Virus record (IMG/VR): IMGVR_UViG_3300028608_000006
Location: 167,789 to 231,788 of that record
Direction: 5' to 3' (one strand)
DNA: 64,000 nucleotides
Both the position numbers and the translations under genes were made by a program. Position 1 is the stretch's first letter, and each line of letters starts with the position of its first letter. The notes beneath the pieces are model-generated. The model had not been told where the DNA came from. It saw only the letters and a program-made list of their open reading frames with translations, and searched no databases. Below, in pieces: positions 2,570-51,031 of the stretch.

Positions 2570-4092
2570 TATCTTCTCTCCTGGATGATGTTCCAGGCAA
2601 TCAGCCCGGCATTCGAGGTGTAGGTGTTAATTGGACGCGTCGGGAACTTACCCCAGCCTTTAGCGATGTCTTGACGGACTTCGAACAGGTGGTTGATCCA
2701 GTGACTGTCAAACTGGTTCCAGTCGTATTCGTTCCAGAACGACTCAATGATCAAACGATCATCAGGATGATTGCGCATATCATCCCAGAAGGCGTCTGTG
2801 TAGTCGCGTATGGCCCAATCGATGCAAATGACGACCCGATATGTGTTACGCATCTCAGGCAGCCCAGAGAGCCAGATAGTACCCGTCTCGTCCAACGACA
2901 TCCGAGGAATGTGTACGCGCTGGTCATTACTGAACACTTGAATGGTGAAACAGCTCTCGTTATCACGGAAAGCAAACTCACGACGACGCAGGATGTAGTT
3001 CTTAACCCGTTCGTTCCATTCGTAGCCCGGGATCTCGAAGATGTTACCCAGCGCTTGGTTCTCGACATTCTGAACAGAACAGCGAACCTGGATAACCGGT
3101 TGCATCCACGCACGGAACTTCCAACGCCATGGATCGTGCAACGGTAGGCGGAGGTAGTACGGTGCTTGAATGTGACGGTCAGGGAAACCTAGGTCACGAG
3201 CAAACGCCACTTCAGGAGCCACACGCTTGTTGAACTGTTCTACGTGTTTTTCCTGAGGAGCCGGAATAAAGGCTTCAGGGATTTGGCTTTGGTAAACCAT
3301 CAGCGGGTACTGCAACTCCCAACCAATGAACTCTTGGAAGAAGAAGTTGTAGTTCATCGTGACTTCGTACTTACCAAAGGTTTCTGCTTTACGAGCCAGA
3401 GCGGTTTGCGGTTCGTCGAAGTAGATGCCGATGTTGTCCAGCTTCAGTGGGGCTACCATGCGCTTGAGGTTGCCCGCCACGTTACTGATCGTGGTGACCG
3501 GGGACTTGCAGCCAGCATCGAACCAATCCGGCAGCTCAGGAGTCGTAGGTTCGTTCGCCACTAGCAAACCGTGGATCGCTTTCATGAACTCGATAATCTG
3601 TGGGTTGATCACCAAGTGAATGTTGGCACTGAAGTTAAAGGCGGCGATCTGGTTGGCTTGCAAACGGTTGATGCGGTTAACAAAGGTCTTGGCAGAAGTC
3701 CGGCTATTAAAGTAAGCCGTGACCGCTACCTTGATGCGACGCCCTTCAAAGCTAGGCGTAAGAATCAGCGGCAACGCACCCCCGTCGGACCAAACCGGTA
3801 GTTCAGTCTCCATGCGGCGGGAGTTGCTGAAACCAGAGTTGAACTCATGCTGTTCAACTTCGGTAGCGATGAAAATCTTGTTACGGAATACACCGTCGGT
3901 ATAACGGACAGAGCGGTCGTCGTCAGTGGCGTTGTTGCCAACTAACTTAGCGATCTCGTTCTCACCGTTGAAGTAAATCTGGTTACCACTGTCCAGTCCG
4001 TAGAACTTGAGTACTTGACGGATGGAATCCATAATAGCTGGTCTGAAGAAAGCATTGTAGTCTTCCTCCGACTCAATAAAGGTGTTGAACAT
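2569..4092 (-). CDS. Putative virion structural (neck/tail completion) protein
   Basis: 507-aa ORF; beta-rich N-terminal half; structural cluster. Confidence 0.55.
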   Translation of the reverse strand: MFNTFIESEEDYNAFFRPAIMDSIRQVLKFYGLDSGNQIYFNGENEIAKLVGNNATDDDRSVRYTDGVFRNKIFIATEVEQHEFNSGFSNSRRMETELPVWSDGGALPLILTPSFEGRRIKVAVTAYFNSRTSAKTFVNRINRLQANQIAAFNFSANIHLVINPQIIEFMKAIHGLLVANEPTTPELPDWFDAGCKSPVTTISNVAGNLKRMVAPLKLDNIGIYFDEPQTALARKAETFGKYEVTMNYNFFFQEFIGWELQYPLMVYQSQIPEAFIPAPQEKHVEQFNKRVAPEVAFARDLGFPDRHIQAPYYLRLPLHDPWRWKFRAWMQPVIQVRCSVQNVENQALGNIFEIPGYEWNERVKNYILRRREFAFRDNESCFTIQVFSNDQRVHIPRMSLDETGTIWLSGLPEMRNTYRVVICIDWAIRDYTDAFWDDMRNHPDDRLIIESFWNEYDWNQFDSHWINHLFEVRQDIAKGWGKFPTRPINTYTSNAGLIAWNIIQERR

Positions 4093-4122
4093 GTCGAATA
4101 CTCGTTGTACGAATGAACAAAT

Positions 4123-4153
4123 CCGGTATGGAAGGGGCCACCCTCCATACCGG
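4123..4153 (-). terminator. Intrinsic terminator-like hairpin
   Basis: ccggtatgga(a)ggg / ccctccataccgg stem in the gap after the 242-aa gene. Confidence 0.55.
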
Positions 4154-4165
4154 CATTATGCCTGC

Positions 4166-4894
4166 TTAACCGGCTTTGTCTTTATCACTGGCATCGAGAA
4201 GGCGATAGCGTACGAACCACAGACGATCATCGGGAGTCCTGAAGACAGCGAGATCGGAAACCCCGTCGTTCATCAGGTCAACCACTTCGGCTTCCAGCAT
4301 GTCCGCCACCGAAGGAGCGCACTCGATCGTGTGGTGAATCAGCTCAGCGGCCAAAGATTGAACGAAGCCCTTTCCCAGACCACCACCGCCAACCACGATC
4401 ACGTCGTAAGCCGGGAAGACCTTGCTGACCAAAGCCAGTTGAGCCTTCTGTTCACCCAACGAGCAGCACACGGCGATCTTCGGACGATCGAACTTGGCCT
4501 TGTCCTTCACGGTGATGGCGAGAGAGCCTTTAACGTGGATGGACGTCTCGAGGATGTAAACCCCGGAAGAGAGTGTCCCCTCAACACCGAACCGCACAGT
4601 ACCCTCATCGGCCTCGTAATCAACGCCAGGGGTCAGATACAAACGGTACTTAGCGGAAACAGCCGCCATCACGTCTTCCCAGCTGTCGCCTTCGCTTGCC
4701 ATGACTTCAGCACGCTGACCAGACAGGTAACGAGTGACGTCAACCTTTGGCATGGTAACCCGTTTGGTTTCCTCACCGATCTGGACAACGAAGACTGCCT
4801 TCTCTGGAGACTCAGCAGCGCCGGACTGAATGACCGCGCCAACCGGCAAACTTGCAAGCACAAGTTCCAGCACGCGAGGATTAACGTTACTCAT
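4166..4894 (-). CDS. Putative virion protein with a jumbo-phage repeat-type domain
   Basis: 242 aa; segment PKVDVTRYL...VMAAVSAKYRLYL resembles a segment of the 162-aa ORF at 6308. Confidence 0.5.
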   Translation of the reverse strand: MSNVNPRVLELVLASLPVGAVIQSGAAESPEKAVFVVQIGEETKRVTMPKVDVTRYLSGQRAEVMASEGDSWEDVMAAVSAKYRLYLTPGVDYEADEGTVRFGVEGTLSSGVYILETSIHVKGSLAITVKDKAKFDRPKIAVCCSLGEQKAQLALVSKVFPAYDVIVVGGGGLGKGFVQSLAAELIHHTIECAPSVADMLEAEVVDLMNDGVSDLAVFRTPDDRLWFVRYRLLDASDKDKAG

Positions 4895-24208: not shown

Positions 24209-25276
24209 TTACTTAAGGCCGAAGATACGACGCACGGTGTCGCACAGGCTTTGGATGGTCAGGCAAGTGGTGTGGACGTAGCTGACGGTGCTGTTGATCG
24301 CAATCATCATGTCCTTCGCCACAGCCAGCTCGGCACGGGCGCCGGCTTTACGTTCAGCATGCTTATCCGACCAGCTCAAAGCCTTTTCGCACTCGGTGAT
24401 ACGATGCTCCAGGTTGTGCTTGTTGGCTTTGATGAAACCGTTAATGCTGTCGATGGTTTTCATCTGATGCTGAAGCACTTCGAGCACACGAGCACCCTGA
24501 CCCATATCGCTCACGATCATTGCGCCGTCGATGTGGTTGATGGCGGAACGGATGGCCGAGATATCATTGTTGTAGATCTCGGTGATCAGGTGCTTGTAGA
24601 AGTTGTAGCTTTCATTCGCACCCACATGGATTTCCACATCAGTGTGGAGCTTGGTAATGTGAGCAACCAAGCCGGCACCTTTCTCTTTCACGAGCTTAAG
24701 GCCAGTTTGCAACTTCTTTTGCTGCTTGTGGTTAAGCTTGGCGAACTTCTCGGCGACCTTCTTGGTTTCAGCAGGAGAAGGAGCCGGGGTGGCTTGGATG
24801 ACCTGGATGAGTTCCTGGACTTCCTTAACTTCGGCAGGGGTGGTCACTGGATCAGCAACAACCTTCTGCATGCTTTCCACCAGCTTGTGTTGAACGGCTT
24901 TCGTGTCCCCCGATGGCTTTTCGAGCGCAACCTTCGCCACAGTCAGCGCTTCTTTGGTGTTATCGATCTCAGCCTGAGCACCACCTTCCTTCTTACCGAA
25001 GAAGAAACCCCAGATAGACTTGAACAACTTCTGGACGTATTCCCAGACAGCTTTAAGGCCATCGCCGATAGAACCGAAGAAGCTTTCGTTACCATCAACC
25101 TTCTGCTGACGGGTCAGGCTGTCGTTTGCACCCAACACCGCGTAGGTGTATTCCTGAGCACGGGTCAAGCCAAAGCCTTCGCTACCAGTAACGCCACCCA
25201 TGGTGTCGTCCATTGCAACAAAGATGGTTTCCAGGTGGTCGTTATCAATCTGACCGTAATCTTCGCTAGCTTCCAT
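24209..25276 (-). CDS. Head cargo protein, paralog B
   Basis: GSE/GFGLT...DGNE/SFFGSIGDGLKAVWEYVQKLFKSIWGFFF. Confidence 0.65.
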   Translation of the reverse strand: MEASEDYGQIDNDHLETIFVAMDDTMGGVTGSEGFGLTRAQEYTYAVLGANDSLTRQQKVDGNESFFGSIGDGLKAVWEYVQKLFKSIWGFFFGKKEGGAQAEIDNTKEALTVAKVALEKPSGDTKAVQHKLVESMQKVVADPVTTPAEVKEVQELIQVIQATPAPSPAETKKVAEKFAKLNHKQQKKLQTGLKLVKEKGAGLVAHITKLHTDVEIHVGANESYNFYKHLITEIYNNDISAIRSAINHIDGAMIVSDMGQGARVLEVLQHQMKTIDSINGFIKANKHNLEHRITECEKALSWSDKHAERKAGARAELAVAKDMMIAINSTVSYVHTTCLTIQSLCDTVRRIFGLK

Positions 25277-25358: not shown

Positions 25359-26432
25359 TTACAGGCCGAAGACCTTATTGGTGCGGTGTTGCAGATCAAC
25401 CTGGACGGAGATCGTCTTCTTCATCGACTGCGCAATGGCGGTGGTGAAGGAGAGAATGCCGCGCAGCATGCCCAGCTCGGTGTTCTTGTGCTTGGCAACC
25501 CAGTCGCCCTTGTCGTCCTTGTCGGTCTTGGCCAGGAACGCTTGGCATTCCTTGATCTTCGTGCTGACCTGAGGAGCGTGTTTGGAGAAGCTGGCGGCCA
25601 GGGTTTTAACGCCGTTCAGGTTGTCGATGATCAGCTTGGCCAGTACAGCGGCGTCAGACTGGGACTTGACTTCTTCGCGGTTTTTCAGCGCGGTGATGAC
25701 GGCCTGTTCTTTCGGCACGATGGACTTGGCTTCGCCAACGATGTCCTTGGCCAGGTCTTCGGTGAGTTCGAACTTGCCGCCTTCGTCGCCTTCAGCTTTC
25801 TCGACTACGCCGATGTACTTGCCTTTGGCGTCGATCACGGCCATGGCCGCCAGCTTGAAGCGGTTCTGGGCGTCTTTGTTGACTTTCGGCAACTCATTCG
25901 CCATCTCTTTCACGAGTGCTTTCTTCTCGGTGAGATCCAGGCCGGCTTCTTTCAATCGACCGATGAAAGCGTTCTTGTCGGATTCGGCAGCAGCCGCGAT
26001 CGATGCTTTGCGCATCTTGTCGAACTGGTCTTCGATCTGCTTGTCGTTACCGGTGCCAACCGCCGCTACTTCAGCAGCCAGTTCCTTGACTTCGGCAACA
26101 GCCGCGTCAACTTCTTTGCCCACGTCGCGCTTGAAGAAGAACTCCCAGACCGACTTGAACATCTTGACGATGTAGTCGTAGGTAGCCTTCAAGCCGCCGC
26201 CAACAGCGCTGAAGAAGCTTTCGTTGCCGTCGATGGAGCTGGCGCGCAGAGTACCGCTGGCCATCAGAACGCCTTCAGCATAACGCTGGGCTTCAGTCAG
26301 ACCGAAACCTTCAGCGCCGGTCACGCCGCCGATAGTGTCGTCCATGGCGTCGAACATGATTTCGACATGAGGGATATCCGGGATCGACGAAACTTCGTTT
26401 TCTTCACCGGGTACAAGAGCAAGAGGATCCAT
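25359..26432 (-). CDS. Head cargo protein, paralog A
   Basis: GAE/GFGLT...DGNE/SFFSAVGGGLKATYDYIVKMFKSVWEFFF; strong codon bias. Confidence 0.65.
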   Translation of the reverse strand: MDPLALVPGEENEVSSIPDIPHVEIMFDAMDDTIGGVTGAEGFGLTEAQRYAEGVLMASGTLRASSIDGNESFFSAVGGGLKATYDYIVKMFKSVWEFFFKRDVGKEVDAAVAEVKELAAEVAAVGTGNDKQIEDQFDKMRKASIAAAAESDKNAFIGRLKEAGLDLTEKKALVKEMANELPKVNKDAQNRFKLAAMAVIDAKGKYIGVVEKAEGDEGGKFELTEDLAKDIVGEAKSIVPKEQAVITALKNREEVKSQSDAAVLAKLIIDNLNGVKTLAASFSKHAPQVSTKIKECQAFLAKTDKDDKGDWVAKHKNTELGMLRGILSFTTAIAQSMKKTISVQVDLQHRTNKVFGL

Positions 26433-27224: not shown

Positions 27225-27743
27225 TTACGGTTTGCTGATATTAAGCTTTTTAGCCAACGCCAACAGTTCTCGGTCTTCTTTAGAAAGCCCGTCCGTTGGT
27301 GGTGCCGCAGCGGCATCAGCCTTAGCCCGCTGCTCATCCCCTTTGGTAATCCCCTTAACTAAACTCTCCACTAAGAAAGCTGGCAGGTTAAGGTAATCAT
27401 TGAGTGGGATGATGTCTTTCAATTTACCCCAACCGTATTGATGACCAATAGCGTCAATCGACCACGGGTGGTAGTACTCATTCTCCTTTTCAATGAATGC
27501 AACAGAGGAATGAGGCTTCAGGGTAGAACGGTCGTAATACCCCATGTTGAAGTCGTGCAGTATGCCTTCCTGAAAGTCCAGCTTCTCTCGACTGGTGTCT
27601 TTGAGATTCAGTCCAAACAGGTTAGCTACTACTGCACGATACTCATCGCTGAACTCTCTCTCGAACTCTATTCGGAGATGGCTTCTTTGGTGGCGGCTGC
27701 CGCTTCTGCCGCTTGAGTCATCAGCTTCAACTGGGTGAGGGTA
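27225..27743 (-). CDS. -1-frame ORF, probably the C-terminal extension of a frameshift product (tail chaperone T-like part)
   Basis: Frame open from 27788 to the stop at 27225. No ATG/GTG/TTG before 27545, and that ATG has no well-spaced SD. It is the -1 frame relative to the upstream gene. Confidence 0.6.
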   Translation of the reverse strand, partial: YPHPVEADDSSGRSGSRHQRSHLRIEFEREFSDEYRAVVANLFGLNLKDTSREKLDFQEGILHDFNMGYYDRSTLKPHSSVAFIEKENEYYHPWSIDAIGHQYGWGKLKDIIPLNDYLNLPAFLVESLVKGITKGDEQRAKADAAAAPPTDGLSKEDRELLALAKKLNISKP

Positions 27744-29392
27744 AAAAAAGCCATGAATGGGTCGATAGGGGTGTAACCATAACGACGTTCAGGATCCTGG
27801 AACTCTTCGGTACGACGCTTGCACGCCGGGCAGTGGTAGTTAGCCACAGCGACGAAGGTGCGAGCCATCATAGGCGATTTGTTCAGGATGAAGGCAGAGA
27901 GTTTCTTGTTCAGCTCTTTGCTGTCCAGGATAACTTCCATGCAACCCTTGTTGAACTCGGACGCATCACATTCCGAACGCTTCAACACCACGTCTTCGTC
28001 ATCGCTACCAGGAGCGGCCACGGACACGAAGGATTGGATCCAGTGCAGGAACTCGGTCGAGCCCAGAGTGGTCAGCAACAGACCCACTTGAGTTTGGAAC
28101 TCGGCTTCGTTAACCACCTGCCCACGGATTTCCTGGAGCTGTGGATTGATACGACCGGCGTAGTAGTCGAAGGTTTCGAAAGCTTCGGCCAGCGACGCAG
28201 GACCCACGGTGAAGTAGATCGACTTGTCGGCGTTGTAGACGCGGTTGCTGTCCAGACCGTAAGTGGTCTTTTCGATCATGGCCAGCGTCTCTTCGATGCT
28301 GTACTTGATCTTGGAGTTGAAGATGTTGGCGTAGATAGCCGCTTCTTCATCGGTTTCGATGGAGTGACGAACACGAACCAACTTGTCCGGGTCTGCCACT
28401 TCGAACGCCGACCAGTCGCACATCTCGTTCAGACAACGCAGCTGGAGGTTCACACCATTGCTGTGGGTGGAGCGCAGCAGTGCCATGCAGATCGTACCGA
28501 AGTCACTGAAACGGATAACCCGTACCAGGTCCTTGAAGTCGACAATGCCAGTCACCGAACTGTTGACGATACGAGCCGCCAAGAAGTCCCAGACCACACG
28601 CATGCCAGCGATCACCGACAGACTCACAGTGTTACCGCCTACGGTGCGAACGTAGCCTTTAACAGTGCGGTTGATGTCGTTGACCAGACCAGCCAATTCC
28701 AGCTTGCTTGGACGGGTGAAAGTCAGCGAGCAGAACGAATCACGCAACAGCACGTCGAACTGGAACTCACCGTCTTCCGCACGCATCGCCGAGCGACGCA
28801 TTACTTCCGATACGCTGAAGCCCTTAGTGGCACGACCCGGCTTCTTGCCCAGGATGTCACCGGTGACGATGTCGCTGCCACGATCGCTGACGTTGGAGAT
28901 GCCGTCTTCGTTCATGACCTTGGAACGGATCTTGATGCTGTCGACATGCTCTTCCATGAAACGGTAGAGGTCGGCGCACAGTCTGTTCATTTCTTCACGA
29001 GTTTTGCTCGGGAAGTTGGCTTCGATGTACTGAGCCCAGTCAGCATTAGTAGAAGCAACCATGCCCTCAGTTGCTTCACCGCGTTCGTGCAACGACTGCA
29101 TCGCCGTCACAGACAGCCACTTCGAAAGCAGGGTGTTAGCCTTTTCGTTGTTGGCGCGGGAGTTGCCCAGGAAGATCGGCAGGTAACCGAGTTCACGATC
29201 TTCTTCAGTACCGCTACGGGTAACTTCAGACACCGAAGGCAGGACTTTCTTCATCGGGGTGTTTTCAGCGGTATGCACATCGGCATACGCAGCTTCGGCT
29301 ACCGGAGGAGATGCAACAGCACCACCTACGTTATTGACCGCACCGCCCACATTGTTGACTTCACCAACTGGGCCAGTTTCAGATTCACTCAT
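27668..29392 (-). CDS. Putative tail/baseplate assembly chaperone (G-like; T4 gp26-like features)
   Basis: 574 aa from ATG at 29392; C-terminal CPAC knuckle followed by IDPFMAFF; function inferred. Confidence 0.5.
   Translation of the reverse strand: MSESETGPVGEVNNVGGAVNNVGGAVASPPVAEAAYADVHTAENTPMKKVLPSVSEVTRSGTEEDRELGYLPIFLGNSRANNEKANTLLSKWLSVTAMQSLHERGEATEGMVASTNADWAQYIEANFPSKTREEMNRLCADLYRFMEEHVDSIKIRSKVMNEDGISNVSDRGSDIVTGDILGKKPGRATKGFSVSEVMRRSAMRAEDGEFQFDVLLRDSFCSLTFTRPSKLELAGLVNDINRTVKGYVRTVGGNTVSLSVIAGMRVVWDFLAARIVNSSVTGIVDFKDLVRVIRFSDFGTICMALLRSTHSNGVNLQLRCLNEMCDWSAFEVADPDKLVRVRHSIETDEEAAIYANIFNSKIKYSIEETLAMIEKTTYGLDSNRVYNADKSIYFTVGPASLAEAFETFDYYAGRINPQLQEIRGQVVNEAEFQTQVGLLLTTLGSTEFLHWIQSFVSVAAPGSDDEDVVLKRSECDASEFNKGCMEVILDSKELNKKLSAFILNKSPMMARTFVAVANYHCPACKRRTEEFQDPERRYGYTPIDPFMAFFTLTQLKLMTQAAEAAAATKEAISE
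27743..27749 (-). promoter_or_regulatory. -1 frameshift slippery heptamer T-TTT-TTT
   Basis: Codons GCT TTT TTT ACC fit X-XXY-YYZ in the correct phase, 24 codons before the stop. Confidence 0.65.
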
Positions 29393-30415: not shown

Positions 30416-31381
30416 ATGATTATTGAGAGCCAAGATGCGGTAGTGATGCATGAGGATGAAGATCTTGCCGCCACCCTCATCGGCGGGATCTGGACTGACT
30501 TTAAGGCTTCTATTCCCGAGCCCCAAGCTAGAATATTAACCGAGGGGTTCAATTTAATTCTCCTCGGAATGCCAGCAGGTGAATCATCTGTCGGTGACCT
30601 CGAAGACGACGAGAGCTACGACGGTGATCGCGTTGACTCCCTGCTGCCGAACGTGGTTTTGGGTATGTTGGTCGATGACACTGTCCATACCGCTGAAAAG
30701 AAAAATAACCTGTTTCAGCTCATAACCGGCAATATAATCGAAACGCTGGTGAAGATGGGCTTCACGCTCAACGAAGACGAAGTCAGTCAAGAGCGTCTGA
30801 CCGAACTGTGTCAATTGGTCTCCCTGTTCTACGACCTGCACAACTACCAAGACCTCATTGGTCTGGCTGACGTTCTGGACTCGGCGGACATCCCACCGAA
30901 AGAACGTTACCTGATGGTAATGCAGAAATACCTGGGTATGAACTTCGACATTGATGTCTACGAGCTCATGGTAGACGATGTGAGCGAGGTTACGCTCAAA
31001 GCCATCCGTGACGCTCTGTTGCAAGAGGACATCACTGAGATGCCCCCACAGATGATCGTAAAGCGGGTCATCCAGAACAAAGAGCTGCTGGACGGAACGC
31101 TGGCTTACAAACACATCCGTAACAACGGTTCTGTGGGTGGGTCTGTTCAAAGCTTCCTGAACTTCTACCGCCGTGAGCTGGAACGCCTCACTGACGAACC
31201 TACTTCGGACAACATGATCCAGTACGGTAAAGAAGTCATGGCGATCTTCCTGGCCAGTGAGCTGAACACACCGGTATTGAAAGACAAGCTGATCCGTTAT
31301 CTCGCCGACATCGTCACTGACTACCAAGCGATGATGCAGGTTGAATCACTCATTAACCGGTTGGTACTCACCGATGACTAA
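30416..31381 (+). CDS. Conserved virion-associated protein (phiKZ gp79-like position)
   Basis: 321-aa acidic helical ORF coupled to the vRNAP gene. Confidence 0.5.
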   Translation: MIIESQDAVVMHEDEDLAATLIGGIWTDFKASIPEPQARILTEGFNLILLGMPAGESSVGDLEDDESYDGDRVDSLLPNVVLGMLVDDTVHTAEKKNNLFQLITGNIIETLVKMGFTLNEDEVSQERLTELCQLVSLFYDLHNYQDLIGLADVLDSADIPPKERYLMVMQKYLGMNFDIDVYELMVDDVSEVTLKAIRDALLQEDITEMPPQMIVKRVIQNKELLDGTLAYKHIRNNGSVGGSVQSFLNFYRRELERLTDEPTSDNMIQYGKEVMAIFLASELNTPVLKDKLIRYLADIVTDYQAMMQVESLINRLVLTDD

Positions 31382-32672
31382 ACTCGAGTTTCTCAAGCAC
31401 TGCTTTGATAACAAGGGTTACGGGCTGAAAGCAGCACTTCAGTCCATGATCACCATTCAGTTTGAAGACGAAGACTCGTCGGGGGCTTTCAAGAAGATCC
31501 CGTTTGCGGTCTTCGTGGAAGGGGGTAAGTACCACACCCTCGTAGGTGATGAAGTCGTAGTGGTTGAAGGGGATGCCAAGGTACCTCTCTTCCACATGGA
31601 CTTCCTGATGGATCTCCCTGCTGACTTCCACCCCTGCCTGAAGAACACTGCGGTCAAGACCACCTTCGGGTTGTTCCTATTCAACGTGATCCTCTTCTGG
31701 GAACCCTTCCAAGGTAAGGTGGACTACGTCAACAAGGAATTCACCAAGGGCCTGATTGAAGGCCTGCTGAGCCGCTTGATGGTGGACAACCCTAAGCCGG
31801 GTGAAGAAGTTCCTGAAGGCAAGGCCAGTGTTGATGACTGCCTGAAGTTCAGCGAGAACTGCAACTTCCTCGAAGGGTTGGGGAGTCACTTCATTAAACC
31901 GGGTGGCGTGGACATTCTGGTGGTTGATCCGTCGATCACTAAGTTCCTCAATGAACAGTTCGAACTGCACAAGCACGAGCTGAACAACCCGGTTGTCTTT
32001 ACCGAGATCGTTGACAAAGCGGTAAAGATGGACGAAGAGATCCAGCGTAAGGGTCCGAGTAAGAACTTCTTCATTAACAAGAAGTTTATTCACACGGCTC
32101 GTAAGCGGATGTTCTTGGCGTTTGGTATTGAACCGAATGCCACGGGTGATGGTTGGGTGGCTTTGCCTCAGTCGCTGAACACCGGTATTGACCCTAAGCA
32201 CATCGTTGACTACATCAATACCTCGGTAGCGGGTTCGTACTCCCGTTCCATGGCAACAGGTGACGGTGGCGCTCAGGTAAAAGAAACCCTGCGTCTGGTG
32301 GGTCGTTCCTCTGTCGCAATGGAAGACTGCGGTAGCCCGGTGGGCGAGTTGATCCGTATCGACGACAAGAACAAGAAAGGTTGGATCGGTGGCTATCAGA
32401 TTGTTGACGGTAAGGCTGTACTGCTTACTGAAGAAAGCATCAACAAACTGATCGGCAAGAAGATCTCCATCCGTGTAACCGAGTATTGCACCACGCCTGA
32501 CGGCAACTACTGTCGTGTTTGCTGTGGTGAGAGTCTGGGTATGCTGGCAACTCGTATCAGTGCTGAGGTAGTGCTTATCCCGACTACGTCCATGTTGACA
32601 CGAATGAAGGCAGCTCACACCGCGGGTGGTACGGTTGTGCGTCTGGATCTGAAGACAGCGATTCGTGGTTGA
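31374..32672 (+). CDS. Virion RNA polymerase beta' middle subunit (phiKZ gp80-like)
   Basis: Bridge-helix-like SYSRSMATGDGGAQVKETLR followed by EDCG; zinc site RVTEYC...CRVCCG. Start at ATG 31374. Confidence 0.85.
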   Translation: MTKLEFLKHCFDNKGYGLKAALQSMITIQFEDEDSSGAFKKIPFAVFVEGGKYHTLVGDEVVVVEGDAKVPLFHMDFLMDLPADFHPCLKNTAVKTTFGLFLFNVILFWEPFQGKVDYVNKEFTKGLIEGLLSRLMVDNPKPGEEVPEGKASVDDCLKFSENCNFLEGLGSHFIKPGGVDILVVDPSITKFLNEQFELHKHELNNPVVFTEIVDKAVKMDEEIQRKGPSKNFFINKKFIHTARKRMFLAFGIEPNATGDGWVALPQSLNTGIDPKHIVDYINTSVAGSYSRSMATGDGGAQVKETLRLVGRSSVAMEDCGSPVGELIRIDDKNKKGWIGGYQIVDGKAVLLTEESINKLIGKKISIRVTEYCTTPDGNYCRVCCGESLGMLATRISAEVVLIPTTSMLTRMKAAHTAGGTVVRLDLKTAIRG

Positions 32673-32696
32673 AGCAAAAAAAATAAACAAGCTATA

Positions 32697-50967: not shown

Positions 50968-51031
50968 AAATGTGGCCTTCCGTTGAAATATAGAGACTGT
51001 TGCCTTCGTAATATCAAACAAAAAAATAAAC

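What the first reader, a model, noticed from the sequence alone, without database searches (positions are those of the whole stretch)
27225..29392. Candidate programmed -1 ribosomal frameshift creating a lambda G/GT-like chaperone pair in a nucleus-forming jumbo phage
Seen: 24 codons before its stop, the 574-aa ORF reads ATG GCT TTT TTT ACC, a correctly phased X-XXY-YYZ heptamer (T-TTT-TTT, 27749-27743). It uses two TTT codons where TTC visibly dominates, and is the only 7-T run I noticed inside a CDS. The -1 frame is open from there to 27225 (172 codons: YPHPVEADDS...IEFEREFSDEYRAVVANLFGLNL...DFNMGYYD...). It has no ATG/GTG/TTG until 27545, where the SD is poorly spaced, leaving an otherwise unexplained 122-nt gap with protein-like sequence. 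The predicted fusion is about 722 aa. Known: lambda G/GT and P2 E/E' (T-run slippage) use this layout for tail assembly chaperones. Inferred: a chaperone pair; the tail LNDYLNLPAFLVESLVKGI resembles T-part or T4 gp51-like segments. I am not aware of this being described in phiKZ-like phages, and no tape-measure gene is adjacent.
Basis: partly seen in the sequence, partly recalled or inferred. Interest (0 to 1): 0.92.

Follow-up and report, generated by a model that had tools for sequence, protein, structure and literature searches.

The report
Conserved -1 frameshift in jumbo-phage core gene
A slippery run of T's near the end of a 574-codon gene lets some ribosomes slip back one base and read on into the next "gene", making a longer second form of the protein; the same signal sits at the same spot in every relative examined, including the model jumbo phage phiKZ, where I found no annotation or paper describing it.

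Summary
On the minus strand, ORF1 (29392-27668, 574 aa) has an in-phase T_TTT_TTT at 27749-27743. The -1 frame is open from there for 172 codons to 27225 and has no ATG/GTG/TTG before 27545.

It is far more than chance. Of 101 homologous loci, 100 were assessable and 86 are non-identical. They include EL, RisingSun, OBP, Miami, SPN3US, PCH45, Goslar, RAY and phiKZ gp77/gp76.4. All 100 have an in-phase N_TTT_TTN, a 0-frame stop 8-44 codons later and a -1 frame open for 150-183 codons. The +1 frame control has a median of 5 codons.

Two -1-frame prolines right after the site are invariant in the window's half of the family while the 0-frame residues vary. Called starts of the downstream ORF scatter, and no in-frame fusion exists anywhere.

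Best reading: programmed -1 ribosomal frameshifting makes a 63.5-kDa short form and an 80.5-kDa long form of Chimalliviridae core protein cg18 (PhiKZ gp77 family).

The lambda G/GT analogy holds for the layout only. Tail-chaperone or T4 gp51 membership is not supported: size, gene context, early expression of a homologue and profile comparisons all argue against it. The protein's role remains unknown. I found no description in the searchable literature, so I rate it a new member of a known kind.

The parts
27668..29392 (-). ORF1, 0-frame product (short form): 574 aa, 63.5 kDa, stop TAG at 27670-27668. It is a member of Chimalliviridae core gene cg18 (PhiKZ gp077 / Goslar gp081 / RAY gp267; PHROG 4585).
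   Evidence: phrog_4585, E 1.3e-106; phiKZ gp77 matches the same PHROG, E 8.7e-196; cg18 table; mass.
27743..27749 (-). Slippery heptamer T_TTT_TTT, in phase: 0-frame codons GCT TTT TTT, Phe549-Phe550.
   Evidence: It is the only TTT-TTT Phe pair among 43 Phe-Phe pairs and the only run of 7 or more T's inside a CDS of the window. An in-phase N_TTT_TTN sits at the homologous place in 100 of 100 assessable loci.
27225..27743 (-). The -1 frame extension: 172 codons plus stop (27227-27225). Joined to ORF1 residues 1-550 it gives the long form of 722 aa and 80.5 kDa.
   Evidence: tblastn aligns it from residue 1 in RisingSun, Joad, the EL-likes and FishSpeaker. Alignment A3. It is homologous to the phiKZ-side extensions: hhalign probability 96.5%, E 9e-10.
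27732..27740 (-). The -1-frame codons 2-4 after the shift (Pro-His-Pro). Both Pro codons are invariant in the 20 EL/OBP/Vibrio-side sequences, while the overlapping 0-frame residues vary.
   Evidence: A3 invariant P2 and P4. A4 invariant C40, C41, C46 and C47, which are the first two bases of those Pro codons, while the 0 frame reads T/I/V/D, L/H/R/Q, T/S/I/V.
27671..27742 (-). The 0-frame C-terminal tail of the short form (24 codons), dual-coding with the first 24 codons of the -1 frame. It is modelled as the end of a long C-terminal helix (residues 545-573).
27546..27667 (-). The apparent 122-nt intergenic gap. It is in fact -1-frame coding sequence (linker plus the first helices of the extension domain).
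   Evidence: It is open in all loci. The -1 frame gives the best cross-species score in 7 of 7 comparisons. The hhalign match to phiKZ-side extensions starts at residue 38, upstream of the ATG. PHROG 19747 aligns from residue 60.
27225..27545 (-). ORF2 as a gene caller would call it (106 aa from ATG 27545; PHROG 19747). It is the C-terminal part of the extension. Independent initiation is not excluded but has no support.
   Evidence: GGAAGG lies 19 nt upstream. Called starts in relatives scatter over profile positions 1-84.
28418..28435 (-). Codons of invariant Cys320 and Cys325, the first half of a putative four-Cys zinc site in ORF1.
   Evidence: Alignments A1, A2, A6 and A7.
27821..27832 (-). 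Codons of invariant Cys521 and Cys524 (a C-P-x-C knuckle), the second half of the putative zinc site, 25 residues before the slip site.
   Evidence: Alignments A1, A2 and A6. It is the only stretch that aligns with T4 gp51.

Best explanation
Programmed -1 ribosomal frameshifting in a core gene of nucleus-forming jumbo phages.

Most ribosomes translating ORF1 decode GCT TTT TTT, continue in the 0 frame for 24 codons and stop at 27668. This gives the 574-aa short form, whose last 30 residues are modelled as a helix.

A fraction of ribosomes slip back one base while the two Phe tRNAs occupy TTT-TTT in the P and A sites, re-pairing with T-TT/T-TT. They then read Tyr-Pro-His-Pro and a further 168 codons in the -1 frame, ending at 27225. 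This gives a 722-aa long form. It shares residues 1-550 with the short form, including the four-Cys site. In place of the terminal helix it carries a proline-started, apparently disordered linker and a roughly 100-135-residue helical domain, the sequence usually annotated as a separate small gene.

Shown here:
- the signal and its phase;
- the open frame;
- family-wide conservation;
- selection on the -1 frame directly after the site;
- the lack of a conserved start for the downstream ORF.

Inferred: that the slip is ribosomal rather than transcriptional, that both forms are made and needed, and their ratio. No conserved stimulatory structure was found, so efficiency is probably set by the heptamer alone, as in lambda G/GT.

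The biological role of the protein (cg18, PhiKZ gp77 family) is unknown. My best guess is a non-virion factor in which a fixed minority of molecules carries an extra C-terminal interaction domain.
For: (1) The sequence facts at the stated coordinates.

(2) Conservation. Twelve isolate phages at 22-44% identity all have ORF2 in the -1 frame, an overlap of 85-133 nt and an in-phase T_TTT_TTT or T_TTT_TTC. The same holds for 26 of 26 IMG/VR loci. It also holds for OBP, pEa_SNUABM_54, phiKZ gp77/gp76.4, Goslar gp81/82, RAY gp267/266, Bacillus phage AgentSmith, PCH45 and SPN3US.

The final tally covers 100 of 100 assessable loci, 86 of them non-identical. The 0-frame stop follows 8-44 codons later. 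The -1 frame stays open for 150-183 codons, against a median of 5 for the +1 frame.

(3) The nucleotide pattern is kept, not the residues:
- the codon before the site encodes A, S, N, T, L, V or G, yet ends in T in 75 of 86 loci;
- the last codon can be TTT or TTC (Phe) or TTG or TTA (Leu);
- this window uses TTT-TTT although TTC is 79% of its Phe codons.

(4) Selection on the -1 frame starts at the site. Pro2 and Pro4 are invariant while the 0-frame residues vary. In many lineages a -1-frame stop lies only a few codons upstream, which bounds the shift window.

(5) The gap is coding.

(6) A profile of the extension, searched against 1.84 billion representative proteins, gave 71 hits. All are 61-172 aa and none is fused in frame. 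Their called starts scatter over profile positions 1-84. All 38 ORF1 homologues are 559-589 aa.

(7) T-runs of only 5-6 in 28 of 86 loci argue against RNA-polymerase stuttering.
Against: There is no direct evidence: no trans-frame peptide, ribosome footprints or reporter data.

No conserved downstream hairpin or pseudoknot and no upstream SD-like element was found. RNAalifold gave 0 consensus pairs, and single-sequence z-scores ran from -2.8 to +1.0.

Eleven of 86 loci have G, not T, at the first heptamer position, which weakens P-site re-pairing.

These phages transcribe with their own multisubunit RNA polymerases, whose slippage behaviour on short T-runs is unknown.

Phe-Phe is itself nearly invariant in the protein, so the phase of the run is partly fixed by protein constraints.

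Codon-position bias of substitutions in the gap is only modest among the closest relatives: 12/11/16 and 11/8/16.
Confidence: 0.77

Rival explanations
1. Transcriptional slippage. The phage RNA polymerase (or the host's) stutters on the T-run and adds one U to a fraction of mRNAs. Standard translation of those mRNAs gives the same long protein.
For: The site is a pure homopolymer run of 7 here and of 8-9 in 24 of 86 loci. No ribosomal stimulatory element is conserved. A T at the position before the run lengthens the homopolymer as well as completing the heptamer. The product would be identical, so comparative data cannot separate the two fully.
Against: In 28 of 86 non-identical loci the run is only 5-6 T's, shorter than the runs of about 8-9 that known bacterial slippage sites use (established knowledge). 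Yet the layout is unchanged. The pattern always fits N_TTT_TTN in phase in all 100 loci.
Confidence: 0.13
2. Two ordinary genes. ORF2 is translated on its own from ATG 27545 (or from an unusual start further upstream), and the open -1 frame across the junction has no function.
For: Every database record annotates two genes. An ATG exists at 27545 and is kept in the closest relatives. Independent initiation in addition to the frameshift cannot be excluded.
Against: - No ATG/GTG/TTG occurs in the first 66 codons here, and the purine-rich stretch is 19 nt from the ATG.
- That Met is not conserved in L028, L029, L034, L036 and L040.
- Called starts scatter over profile positions 1-84.
- Protein-level conservation runs from the first codon after the heptamer.
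- The frame is open in 100 of 100 loci, against a median of 5 codons in the control frame.
Confidence: 0.06
3. Homopolymer sequencing or assembly error. The real genome has one more T and encodes a single 722-aa ORF.
For: T-runs are error-prone on some platforms, and the window comes from a metagenome assembly.
Against: The same frame relation is seen in two independent samples with identical sequence and in 100 loci, including dozens of isolate genomes from many laboratories, with run lengths of 5-9. No in-frame fused homologue exists among 1.84 billion representative proteins or among the 38 ORF1 homologues.
Confidence: 0.01

Closest known systems
Lambda G/GT and the conserved -1 frameshift of tail assembly chaperone genes in long-tailed phages (established knowledge; Xu, Hendrix and Duda 2004)
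   Same: Two products share an N-terminal part and differ at the C-terminus through a -1 slip at a heptamer near the end of the upstream ORF. The arrangement, rather than the sequence, is conserved across very distant phages. No strong stimulatory RNA structure is present. The downstream frame has no start of its own.
   Different: ORF1 is 530-660 aa rather than about 100-150 aa. It is not located between the tail tube and tape-measure genes. It has no sequence or profile similarity to chaperone families. A homologue is reported as early-expressed. Membership is not supported.
Phage P2 E / E+E' (slippery T_TTT_TTG; established knowledge)
   Same: It has the same kind of T-run heptamer. The identical T_TTT_TTG occurs in Erwinia phage pEa_SNUABM_54. 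It is a -1 shift that extends the protein.
   Different: P2 E is a small tail chaperone that sits next to the tape-measure gene, which is a different protein family and gene context.
T7 gene 10A/10B (capsid) and E. coli dnaX tau/gamma (established knowledge)
   Same: A -1 shift near the 3' end of a large ORF gives two isoforms of one protein with different C-termini in a fixed ratio. As in T7 gene 10, the shifted form is the longer one, and the slip takes place on Phe codons in a U-run.
   Different: dnaX has an upstream SD-like element and a downstream stem-loop, and its shifted product is the shorter one. No such elements are conserved here. The proteins are unrelated.
T4 gp51, baseplate hub assembly catalyst (Pfam PF12322)
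   Same: Both are large-myovirus proteins with a conserved C-P-x-C motif. Foldseek links the ORF1 model to a BFVD entry labelled 'Baseplate hub assembly protein, bacteriophage T4-like' (E 6.8e-3, TM 0.49 on the target). Some depositors label homologues 'baseplate (hub assembly) protein'.
   Different: No PF12322 hit in the ORF1 homologues scanned, 21. hhalign gave only 17-33% probability over 12-30 columns around the zinc knuckle. The -1 extension does not match gp51 (probability 0.1%). No frameshift is annotated for T4 gene 51.

Membership tests
Programmed -1 ribosomal frameshift site (X_XXY_YYZ class) | Slippery heptamer in the correct phase of the upstream ORF | tested here: met
   GCT TTT TTT at 27751-27743. 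An in-phase N_TTT_TTN is present in 100 of 100 assessable loci, and it is the canonical T_TTT_TTN in 75 of the 86 non-identical ones.
Programmed -1 ribosomal frameshift site (X_XXY_YYZ class) | An overlapping -1 ORF that is open from the site and lacks its own conserved start | tested here: met
   172 codons here and 150-183 in all loci, against a median of 5 in the +1 frame. No start codon occurs before 27545. Called starts scatter in relatives.
Programmed -1 ribosomal frameshift site (X_XXY_YYZ class) | Site and frame relation conserved in distant homologues, with selection on the trans-frame sequence | tested here: met
   -1-frame Pro2 and Pro4 are invariant while the 0-frame residues vary. 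The extension is homologous across both halves of the family.
Programmed -1 ribosomal frameshift site (X_XXY_YYZ class) | Stimulatory element (upstream SD-like sequence or downstream hairpin/pseudoknot); common but not obligatory | tested here: not met
   RNAalifold on 22 sequences gave 0 consensus pairs. Single folds were not consistently better than shuffles. No GGAGG-like element is seen upstream in alignment A4.
Programmed -1 ribosomal frameshift site (X_XXY_YYZ class) | Direct detection of the trans-frame protein, and dependence on the heptamer | not testable with these tools
   This needs mass spectrometry, western blot, a reporter assay or ribosome profiling.
Lambda G/GT-type tail assembly chaperone pair | Gene pair located between the major tail/tube gene and the tape-measure gene | tested here: not met
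   All neighbours are PHROGs of unknown function, plus an RNA polymerase beta-subunit gene at 31371-32669. In EL, RisingSun and OBP the block abuts DNA polymerase. In phiKZ it lies between gp75 helicase and the gp79/gp80 virion RNA polymerase genes.
Lambda G/GT-type tail assembly chaperone pair | Small upstream protein (about 100-150 aa), with the shift near its end roughly doubling the length | tested here: not met
   ORF1 is 574 aa (about 530-660 aa in relatives). The shift adds a net 148 aa.
Lambda G/GT-type tail assembly chaperone pair | Two products with a common N-terminus made by a -1 slip, in a layout conserved without sequence conservation | tested here: met
Lambda G/GT-type tail assembly chaperone pair | Sequence or profile similarity to known chaperone families | tested here: not met
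   No Pfam, NCBIfam or PDB-sequence hit for ORF1 or the extension. The PHROG matches are all 'unknown function'.
Lambda G/GT-type tail assembly chaperone pair | Late expression and absence from the mature virion | tested here: inconclusive
   From papers only:
- not among proteins detected in a RisingSun lysate (PMC6034870);
- Goslar gp81/gp82 are not mentioned in the Goslar virion cryo-EM preprint;
- the phiKZ gp077 homologue of Churi is listed as early-expressed (PMC11849849).
T4 gp51 baseplate hub assembly catalyst (Pfam PF12322) | Match to PF12322, or profile-profile homology to the gp51 family | tested here: not met
   T4 gp51 itself hits PF12322 at E 3.9e-52, and none of the cg18 homologues scanned does. 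hhalign gave probability 17% and 33% over only 12-30 columns.
T4 gp51 baseplate hub assembly catalyst (Pfam PF12322) | Fold similarity to a family member | tested here: inconclusive
   Foldseek against BFVD: A0A6J5KPC0, labelled T4-like baseplate hub assembly protein, E 6.8e-3, TM 0.29 (query) / 0.49 (target); a Campylobacter phage gp51-like entry, E 4. There is no PDB neighbour.
   hhalign of the extension alignments A3 and A8 against the gp51 family A5 gave probability 0.1%.
Chimalliviridae core gene cg18 (PhiKZ gp077 / Goslar gp081 / RAY gp267; PHROG 4585) | Sequence homology to the named members | tested here: met
   Window ORF1 matches phrog_4585 at E 1.3e-106. phiKZ gp77, RAY gp267, Goslar gp81 and AgentSmith gp11 match the same PHROG at E 8.7e-196 to 3.7e-67. 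A bridging tblastn was run. The cg18 table is in the supplement of PMC10299810.
Chimalliviridae core gene cg18 (PhiKZ gp077 / Goslar gp081 / RAY gp267; PHROG 4585) | Conserved four-Cys pattern and a Phe-Phe (or Phe-Leu) pair near the C-terminus | tested here: met
   C320, C325, C521 and C524 are invariant in A1, A2 and A6. F549 and F550 are invariant or nearly so.

The most novel reading that the evidence does not exclude
An ancient recoding signal, unannotated so far, sits in a core gene of all nucleus-forming jumbo phages and of some relatives (253 phage records hold the gene; the signal is present in all 100 loci checked). These include the model phages phiKZ, Goslar, RAY, PCH45, SPN3US and EL.

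If so, the 'hypothetical' small gene downstream of cg18 (phiKZ gp76.4, Goslar gp82, RAY gp266, SPN3US gp40) is not a gene of its own. It would be the C-terminal domain of a second, frameshift-made isoform of an early, non-virion, zinc-binding protein with a fold that has no PDB neighbour.

Because no RNA stimulator is conserved, the isoform ratio could depend on the state of the host ribosome. These phages are known to modify the ribosome with ribosome-binding proteins such as phiKZ gp014.
Probability: 0.6. Interest if true: 0.78.

Novelty: new member of a known kind. Interest (0 to 1): 0.72.

Why it matters
Programmed frameshifts that stay fixed over such deep divergence (ORF1 identity falls to 13-16%) mark proteins whose two forms are both needed in a set ratio. 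Lambda G/GT and dnaX are the classic cases.

Here the signal lies in one of the roughly 70 core genes that define nucleus-forming jumbo phages. That gene has no known function, and its AF2 model is confident (pTM 0.85) but has no PDB neighbour.

Recognising the frameshift has four practical consequences:
- It corrects the annotation of two genes in the sampled genomes, and probably across the 253 phage records that hold the gene, including phiKZ.
- It explains the odd 40-220-nt 'intergenic gaps' after this gene.
- It adds a conserved domain to the core proteome.
- It gives experimenters a handle: a synonymous TTC-TTC mutant separates the two isoforms.

It would also be, as far as I could find, the first recoding event described for this phage family.

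Tried and rejected
- **Near-identical DNA in isolate phages:** none found (megablast).
- **Function from sequence libraries:** Pfam, NCBIfam, PDB sequence profiles and PHROG labels gave nothing.
- **Function from fold:** the ORF1 model is confident but has no PDB neighbour. The BFVD hits are homologues plus one weakly similar gp51-labelled entry. The model of the extension is poor (pLDDT 62), so its PDB matches are meaningless.
- **T4 gp51 homology:** tested four ways and not established. My own idea that gp51 might span the frameshift junction (C-P-x-C in ORF1 plus the extension) was rejected.
- **Stimulatory RNA:** single folds and RNAalifold found nothing conserved.
- **Codon-position substitution counts in the gap:** among the closest relatives the bias is only weak. 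The cross-species three-frame score test was clearer.
- **Tool problems:** A broad alignment was too diverse for a locus scan. A first tally script had a phase bug, which was fixed.
- **Literature:** ten searches found no report of a programmed frameshift in phiKZ-like phages, and one of them was wasted. The SPN3US essential-gene paper and the PCH45 Tn-seq preprint say nothing usable about this gene.
Full report
**1. The observation**

On the minus strand the window reads ATG GCT TTT TTT ACC. The seven T's at 27749-27743 therefore lie in phase as X_XXY_YYZ in an ORF that runs from ATG 29392 (or TTG 29398) to TAG 27670-27668, 574 aa. From the last T of the run the -1 frame is open for 172 codons to 27225. 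The 0 frame over the same stretch has eight stops.

In the -1 frame, which is open from 27788, the first ATG/GTG/TTG is the ATG at 27545. The only purine-rich stretch before it, GGAAGG, is 19 nt away. The ORF1 stop and that ATG are 122 nt apart.

In 51 long ORFs of the window TTT is used 194 times and TTC 721 times. Of 43 Phe-Phe pairs only this one is TTT-TTT. The two other A/T runs of 7 or more in the window are intergenic.

The predicted products are 574 aa / 63.5 kDa and 722 aa / 80.5 kDa.

**2. Where the window comes from**

It is identical to two IMG/VR contigs. One is 231,788 bp, so this is an uncultivated jumbo phage. No isolate phage has near-identical DNA.

ORF1 matches PHROG 4585 (E 1.3e-106) and the downstream frame matches PHROG 19747; both are of unknown function. 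By tblastn ORF1 has homologues at 24-44% identity in 69 phage records, including EL, RisingSun/Joad, FishSpeaker, Miami and Vibrio and Aeromonas jumbo phages.

A bridging search with the homologue from Erwinia phage pEa_SNUABM_54 reaches 253 records. These include phiKZ gp77, RAY gp267, Goslar gp81, PCH45, the SPN3US-likes, Ralstonia, Xanthomonas and Burkholderia jumbo phages, and Bacillus phage AgentSmith. phiKZ gp77, RAY gp267 and Goslar gp81 match the same PHROG.

They are listed together as core gene cg18, 'hypothetical protein', in the Chimalliviridae core-genome study (supplement of PMC10299810). The downstream small ORF is not listed there beside cg18.

**3. The comparative test**

I ran it in stages.

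- In RisingSun, EL, FishSpeaker and Miami the homologous place reads xxT TTT TTT, and the -1 frame runs open into the downstream ORF.
- In twelve isolate phages at 22-44% identity the downstream ORF is always in the -1 frame. That frame reaches back 85-133 nt into ORF1, and the overlap holds an in-phase T_TTT_TTT or T_TTT_TTC.
- The same is true of 26 of 26 IMG/VR loci.
- It is also true of OBP, pEa_SNUABM_54 with T_TTT_TTG, phiKZ, Goslar, RAY and AgentSmith, PCH45 and SPN3US.
- It holds in 55 further assessable IMG/VR loci on the phiKZ side.

The final tally covers 101 loci, of which 100 are assessable, and all 100 have an in-phase N_TTT_TTN. There are 86 non-identical sequences:

| Heptamer | Loci |
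|---|---|
| T_TTT_TTT | 43 |
| T_TTT_TTC | 30 |
| G_TTT_TTT | 8 |
| G_TTT_TTC | 3 |
| T_TTT_TTG | 1 |
| T_TTT_TTA | 1 |

The 0-frame stop follows 8-44 codons later (median 16). The -1 frame stays open for 150-183 codons (median 169). The +1 frame, as a control, stays open for a median of 5 codons.

**4. Is the conservation at the signal level and in the trans-frame?**

Four lines of evidence say yes.

First, the codon before the run encodes Ala, Ser, Asn, Thr, Leu, Val or Gly, yet it ends in T in 75 of 86 loci. The last codon of the heptamer can be Phe (TTT, TTC) or Leu (TTG, TTA). So the nucleotide pattern is kept, not the residues.

Second, in the DNA alignment of 22 relatives the invariant bases just after the run are the first two bases of the second and fourth -1-frame codons, both Pro. 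The overlapping 0-frame residues vary: T/I/V/D, L/H/R/Q, T/S/I/V. Selection on the -1 frame thus begins at the heptamer. In many lineages a -1-frame stop lies a few codons upstream, which bounds the shift site from the other side.

Third, the 'gap' is coding:
- tblastn aligns the 172-aa piece from its first residue in RisingSun, the EL-likes and FishSpeaker.
- The 135 nt after the 0-frame stop score best in the -1 frame in 7 of 7 cross-species comparisons.
- The extension of the EL side is homologous to that of the phiKZ side (hhalign probability 96.5%, E 9e-10, 112 columns). The match starts at residue 38, well upstream of the window's ATG at residue 67.

Fourth, a profile of the extension searched against 1.84 billion representative proteins finds 71 proteins. 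All are 61-172 aa and none is fused in frame to an ORF1-like body. Their called N-termini scatter over profile positions 1 to 84, which is what gene callers produce when there is no real start. All 38 database homologues of ORF1 are 559-589 aa. A homopolymer sequencing error is thereby excluded.

**5. Mechanism**

No conserved RNA structure follows the site. Eleven single folds give z-scores from -2.8 to +1.0, with different shapes. RNAalifold on 22 sequences finds no consensus pair. No SD-like element is visible upstream. The shift therefore probably rests on the heptamer alone, as in lambda G/GT (established knowledge).

The main rival is transcriptional slippage, which would give the same protein. 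I rate it lower because 28 of 86 loci have runs of only 5-6 T's. Known bacterial slippage sites need longer runs (established knowledge), and the motif is always in phase. The phage's own RNA polymerases have not been tested for this, so I leave it at about 0.13.

Eleven loci on the phiKZ side (phiPA3-like and others) have G at the first heptamer position, so the P-site tRNA would re-pair at two of three positions. This is unexplained, but such sites are known to work at lower efficiency.

**6. What the two products look like**

The AF2 model of ORF1 is confident (pLDDT 85.4, pTM 0.85). Its last element is a helix at residues 545-573 that runs through Phe549-Phe550 into the 0-frame tail.

In the long form that helix would be cut after Phe550 by Tyr-Pro-x-Pro and followed by about 27 residues modelled as disordered. 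A mostly helical region follows, whose first two helices (residues 33-43 and 52-66) lie in the 'gap' (low confidence, pLDDT 62).

Four cysteines (C320, C325, C521, C524) are invariant across the whole family and probably bind zinc.

**7. Function and the G/GT analogy**

The layout is like G/GT, but membership fails on every testable defining feature except the layout itself:
- Size is wrong.
- There is no tail or tape-measure context. The neighbours are of unknown function plus an RNA polymerase beta-subunit gene here, DNA polymerase in EL, RisingSun and OBP, and helicase and virion RNA polymerase genes in phiKZ.
- There is no family match.

Papers add further points:
- The protein was not detected in a RisingSun lysate (PMC6034870).
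- It is not mentioned in the Goslar virion cryo-EM preprint.
- It is not mentioned in the SPN3US virion and essential-gene study.
- The Churi homologue of phiKZ gp077 is listed among early-expressed proteins (PMC11849849). That list may also hold virion-borne proteins.

A link to T4 gp51 is only a lead. In its favour are one Foldseek hit at E 6.8e-3 to an entry labelled T4-like baseplate hub assembly protein and 17-33% hhalign probability around the C-P-x-C knuckle. Against it, there is no PF12322 match. There is no PDB neighbour for either piece.

I therefore commit to the recoding mechanism and to 'two isoforms of a non-virion core protein, the minor one carrying an extra C-terminal domain'. 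The cellular role stays open.

**8. Novelty**

None of the annotated records I opened marks a joined CDS. RAY even annotates the downstream gene as an ORF that starts inside gp267. phiKZ shows a 218-nt 'gap' before gp76.4.

Full-text searches found no description:
- 'phiKZ' or 'Chimalliviridae' combined with 'slippery' or with 'programmed ribosomal frameshift', and 'phi KZ' with 'frameshift' and 'ribosomal', returned no papers.
- The looser 'frameshift' searches returned only unrelated uses of the word, as far as I checked (for the Churi paper).
- The core-genome paper and a 2026 review of jumbo phages do not contain the word.

Subscription-only papers were not searchable. The mechanism is a known kind, so this is a new, deeply conserved member in a new protein family.

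**9. Verdict**

| Reading | Confidence |
|---|---|
| Some recoding event joins the two frames | about 0.9 |
| It is ribosomal -1 frameshifting | about 0.77 |

Interest is 0.72.

Noticed in passing
L046 (phiKZ NC_004629) 3742-4245; record about 71442-71945: In phiKZ itself, gp77 has ACT TTT TTT ACT 11 codons before its stop. The -1 frame then runs about 165 codons through the 218-nt 'intergenic' stretch into PHIKZ076.4. The model phage therefore carries the same unannotated signal.
   Followed up: yes
L053, L055-L059, L061, L103 (IMG/VR relatives on the phiKZ side, including a phiPA3-sized contig): These lineages have G instead of T at the first heptamer position (GTG TTT TTT, ACG TTT TTT, GAG TTT TTC) and T-runs of only 5-6. 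The -1 frame is nevertheless open for 160-180 codons. This is a non-canonical variant of the site.
   Followed up: partly
window about 27671-27685 (-); alignment A4 columns 95-110: In the EL/RisingSun-like clade the bases GAAGCC(C/A)TCTC just before the 0-frame stop are almost invariant, and the stop always falls right after them. The stretch encodes E-A-L/I-S in frame 0 and R-S-P/H-L in frame -1 (Leu23 is invariant). This could be dual coding or an RNA element; it is not resolved.
   Followed up: partly
window 24209-25276 (-) and 25359-26432 (-): Two tandem paralogous genes (355 and 357 aa; 95 identical residues over 350 aligned columns), both matching PHROG 21850 of unknown function. They lie downstream of the frameshift gene block.
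   Followed up: partly
window 32676-32683 and 51020-51026 (+): These are the only other A/T runs of 7 or more in the 64 kb. Both are intergenic, and each is followed within about 20 nt by a G+C-rich inverted repeat, so they look like terminator regions. The first lies just after the stop of the RNA polymerase beta-subunit gene (31371-32672).
   Followed up: partly
L049 (RAY) 3601-4149; proteins P0084, P0067, P0075: Some annotations and gene calls start the downstream ORF inside the upstream gene. RAY gp266 overlaps gp267 by 136 nt, and three database proteins of 166-172 aa begin at profile positions 1-9. This shows how the missing start codon misleads gene callers.
   Followed up: yes
L047 (Bacillus phage vB_BspM_AgentSmith) 2614-4766: A 200-kb Bacillus phage with no family assigned has the same gene pair with GTT TTT TTA and an open -1 frame of 164 codons. 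The signal therefore extends to a phage of a Gram-positive host. I did not check whether that phage encodes chimallin.
   Followed up: no
window 27821-27832 and 28418-28435 (-): Four cysteines (C320, C325, C521, C524) are invariant in every ORF1 alignment, down to 13% identity. They probably form a structural zinc site. The ORF1 fold (pTM 0.85) has no neighbour in the PDB.
   Followed up: partly
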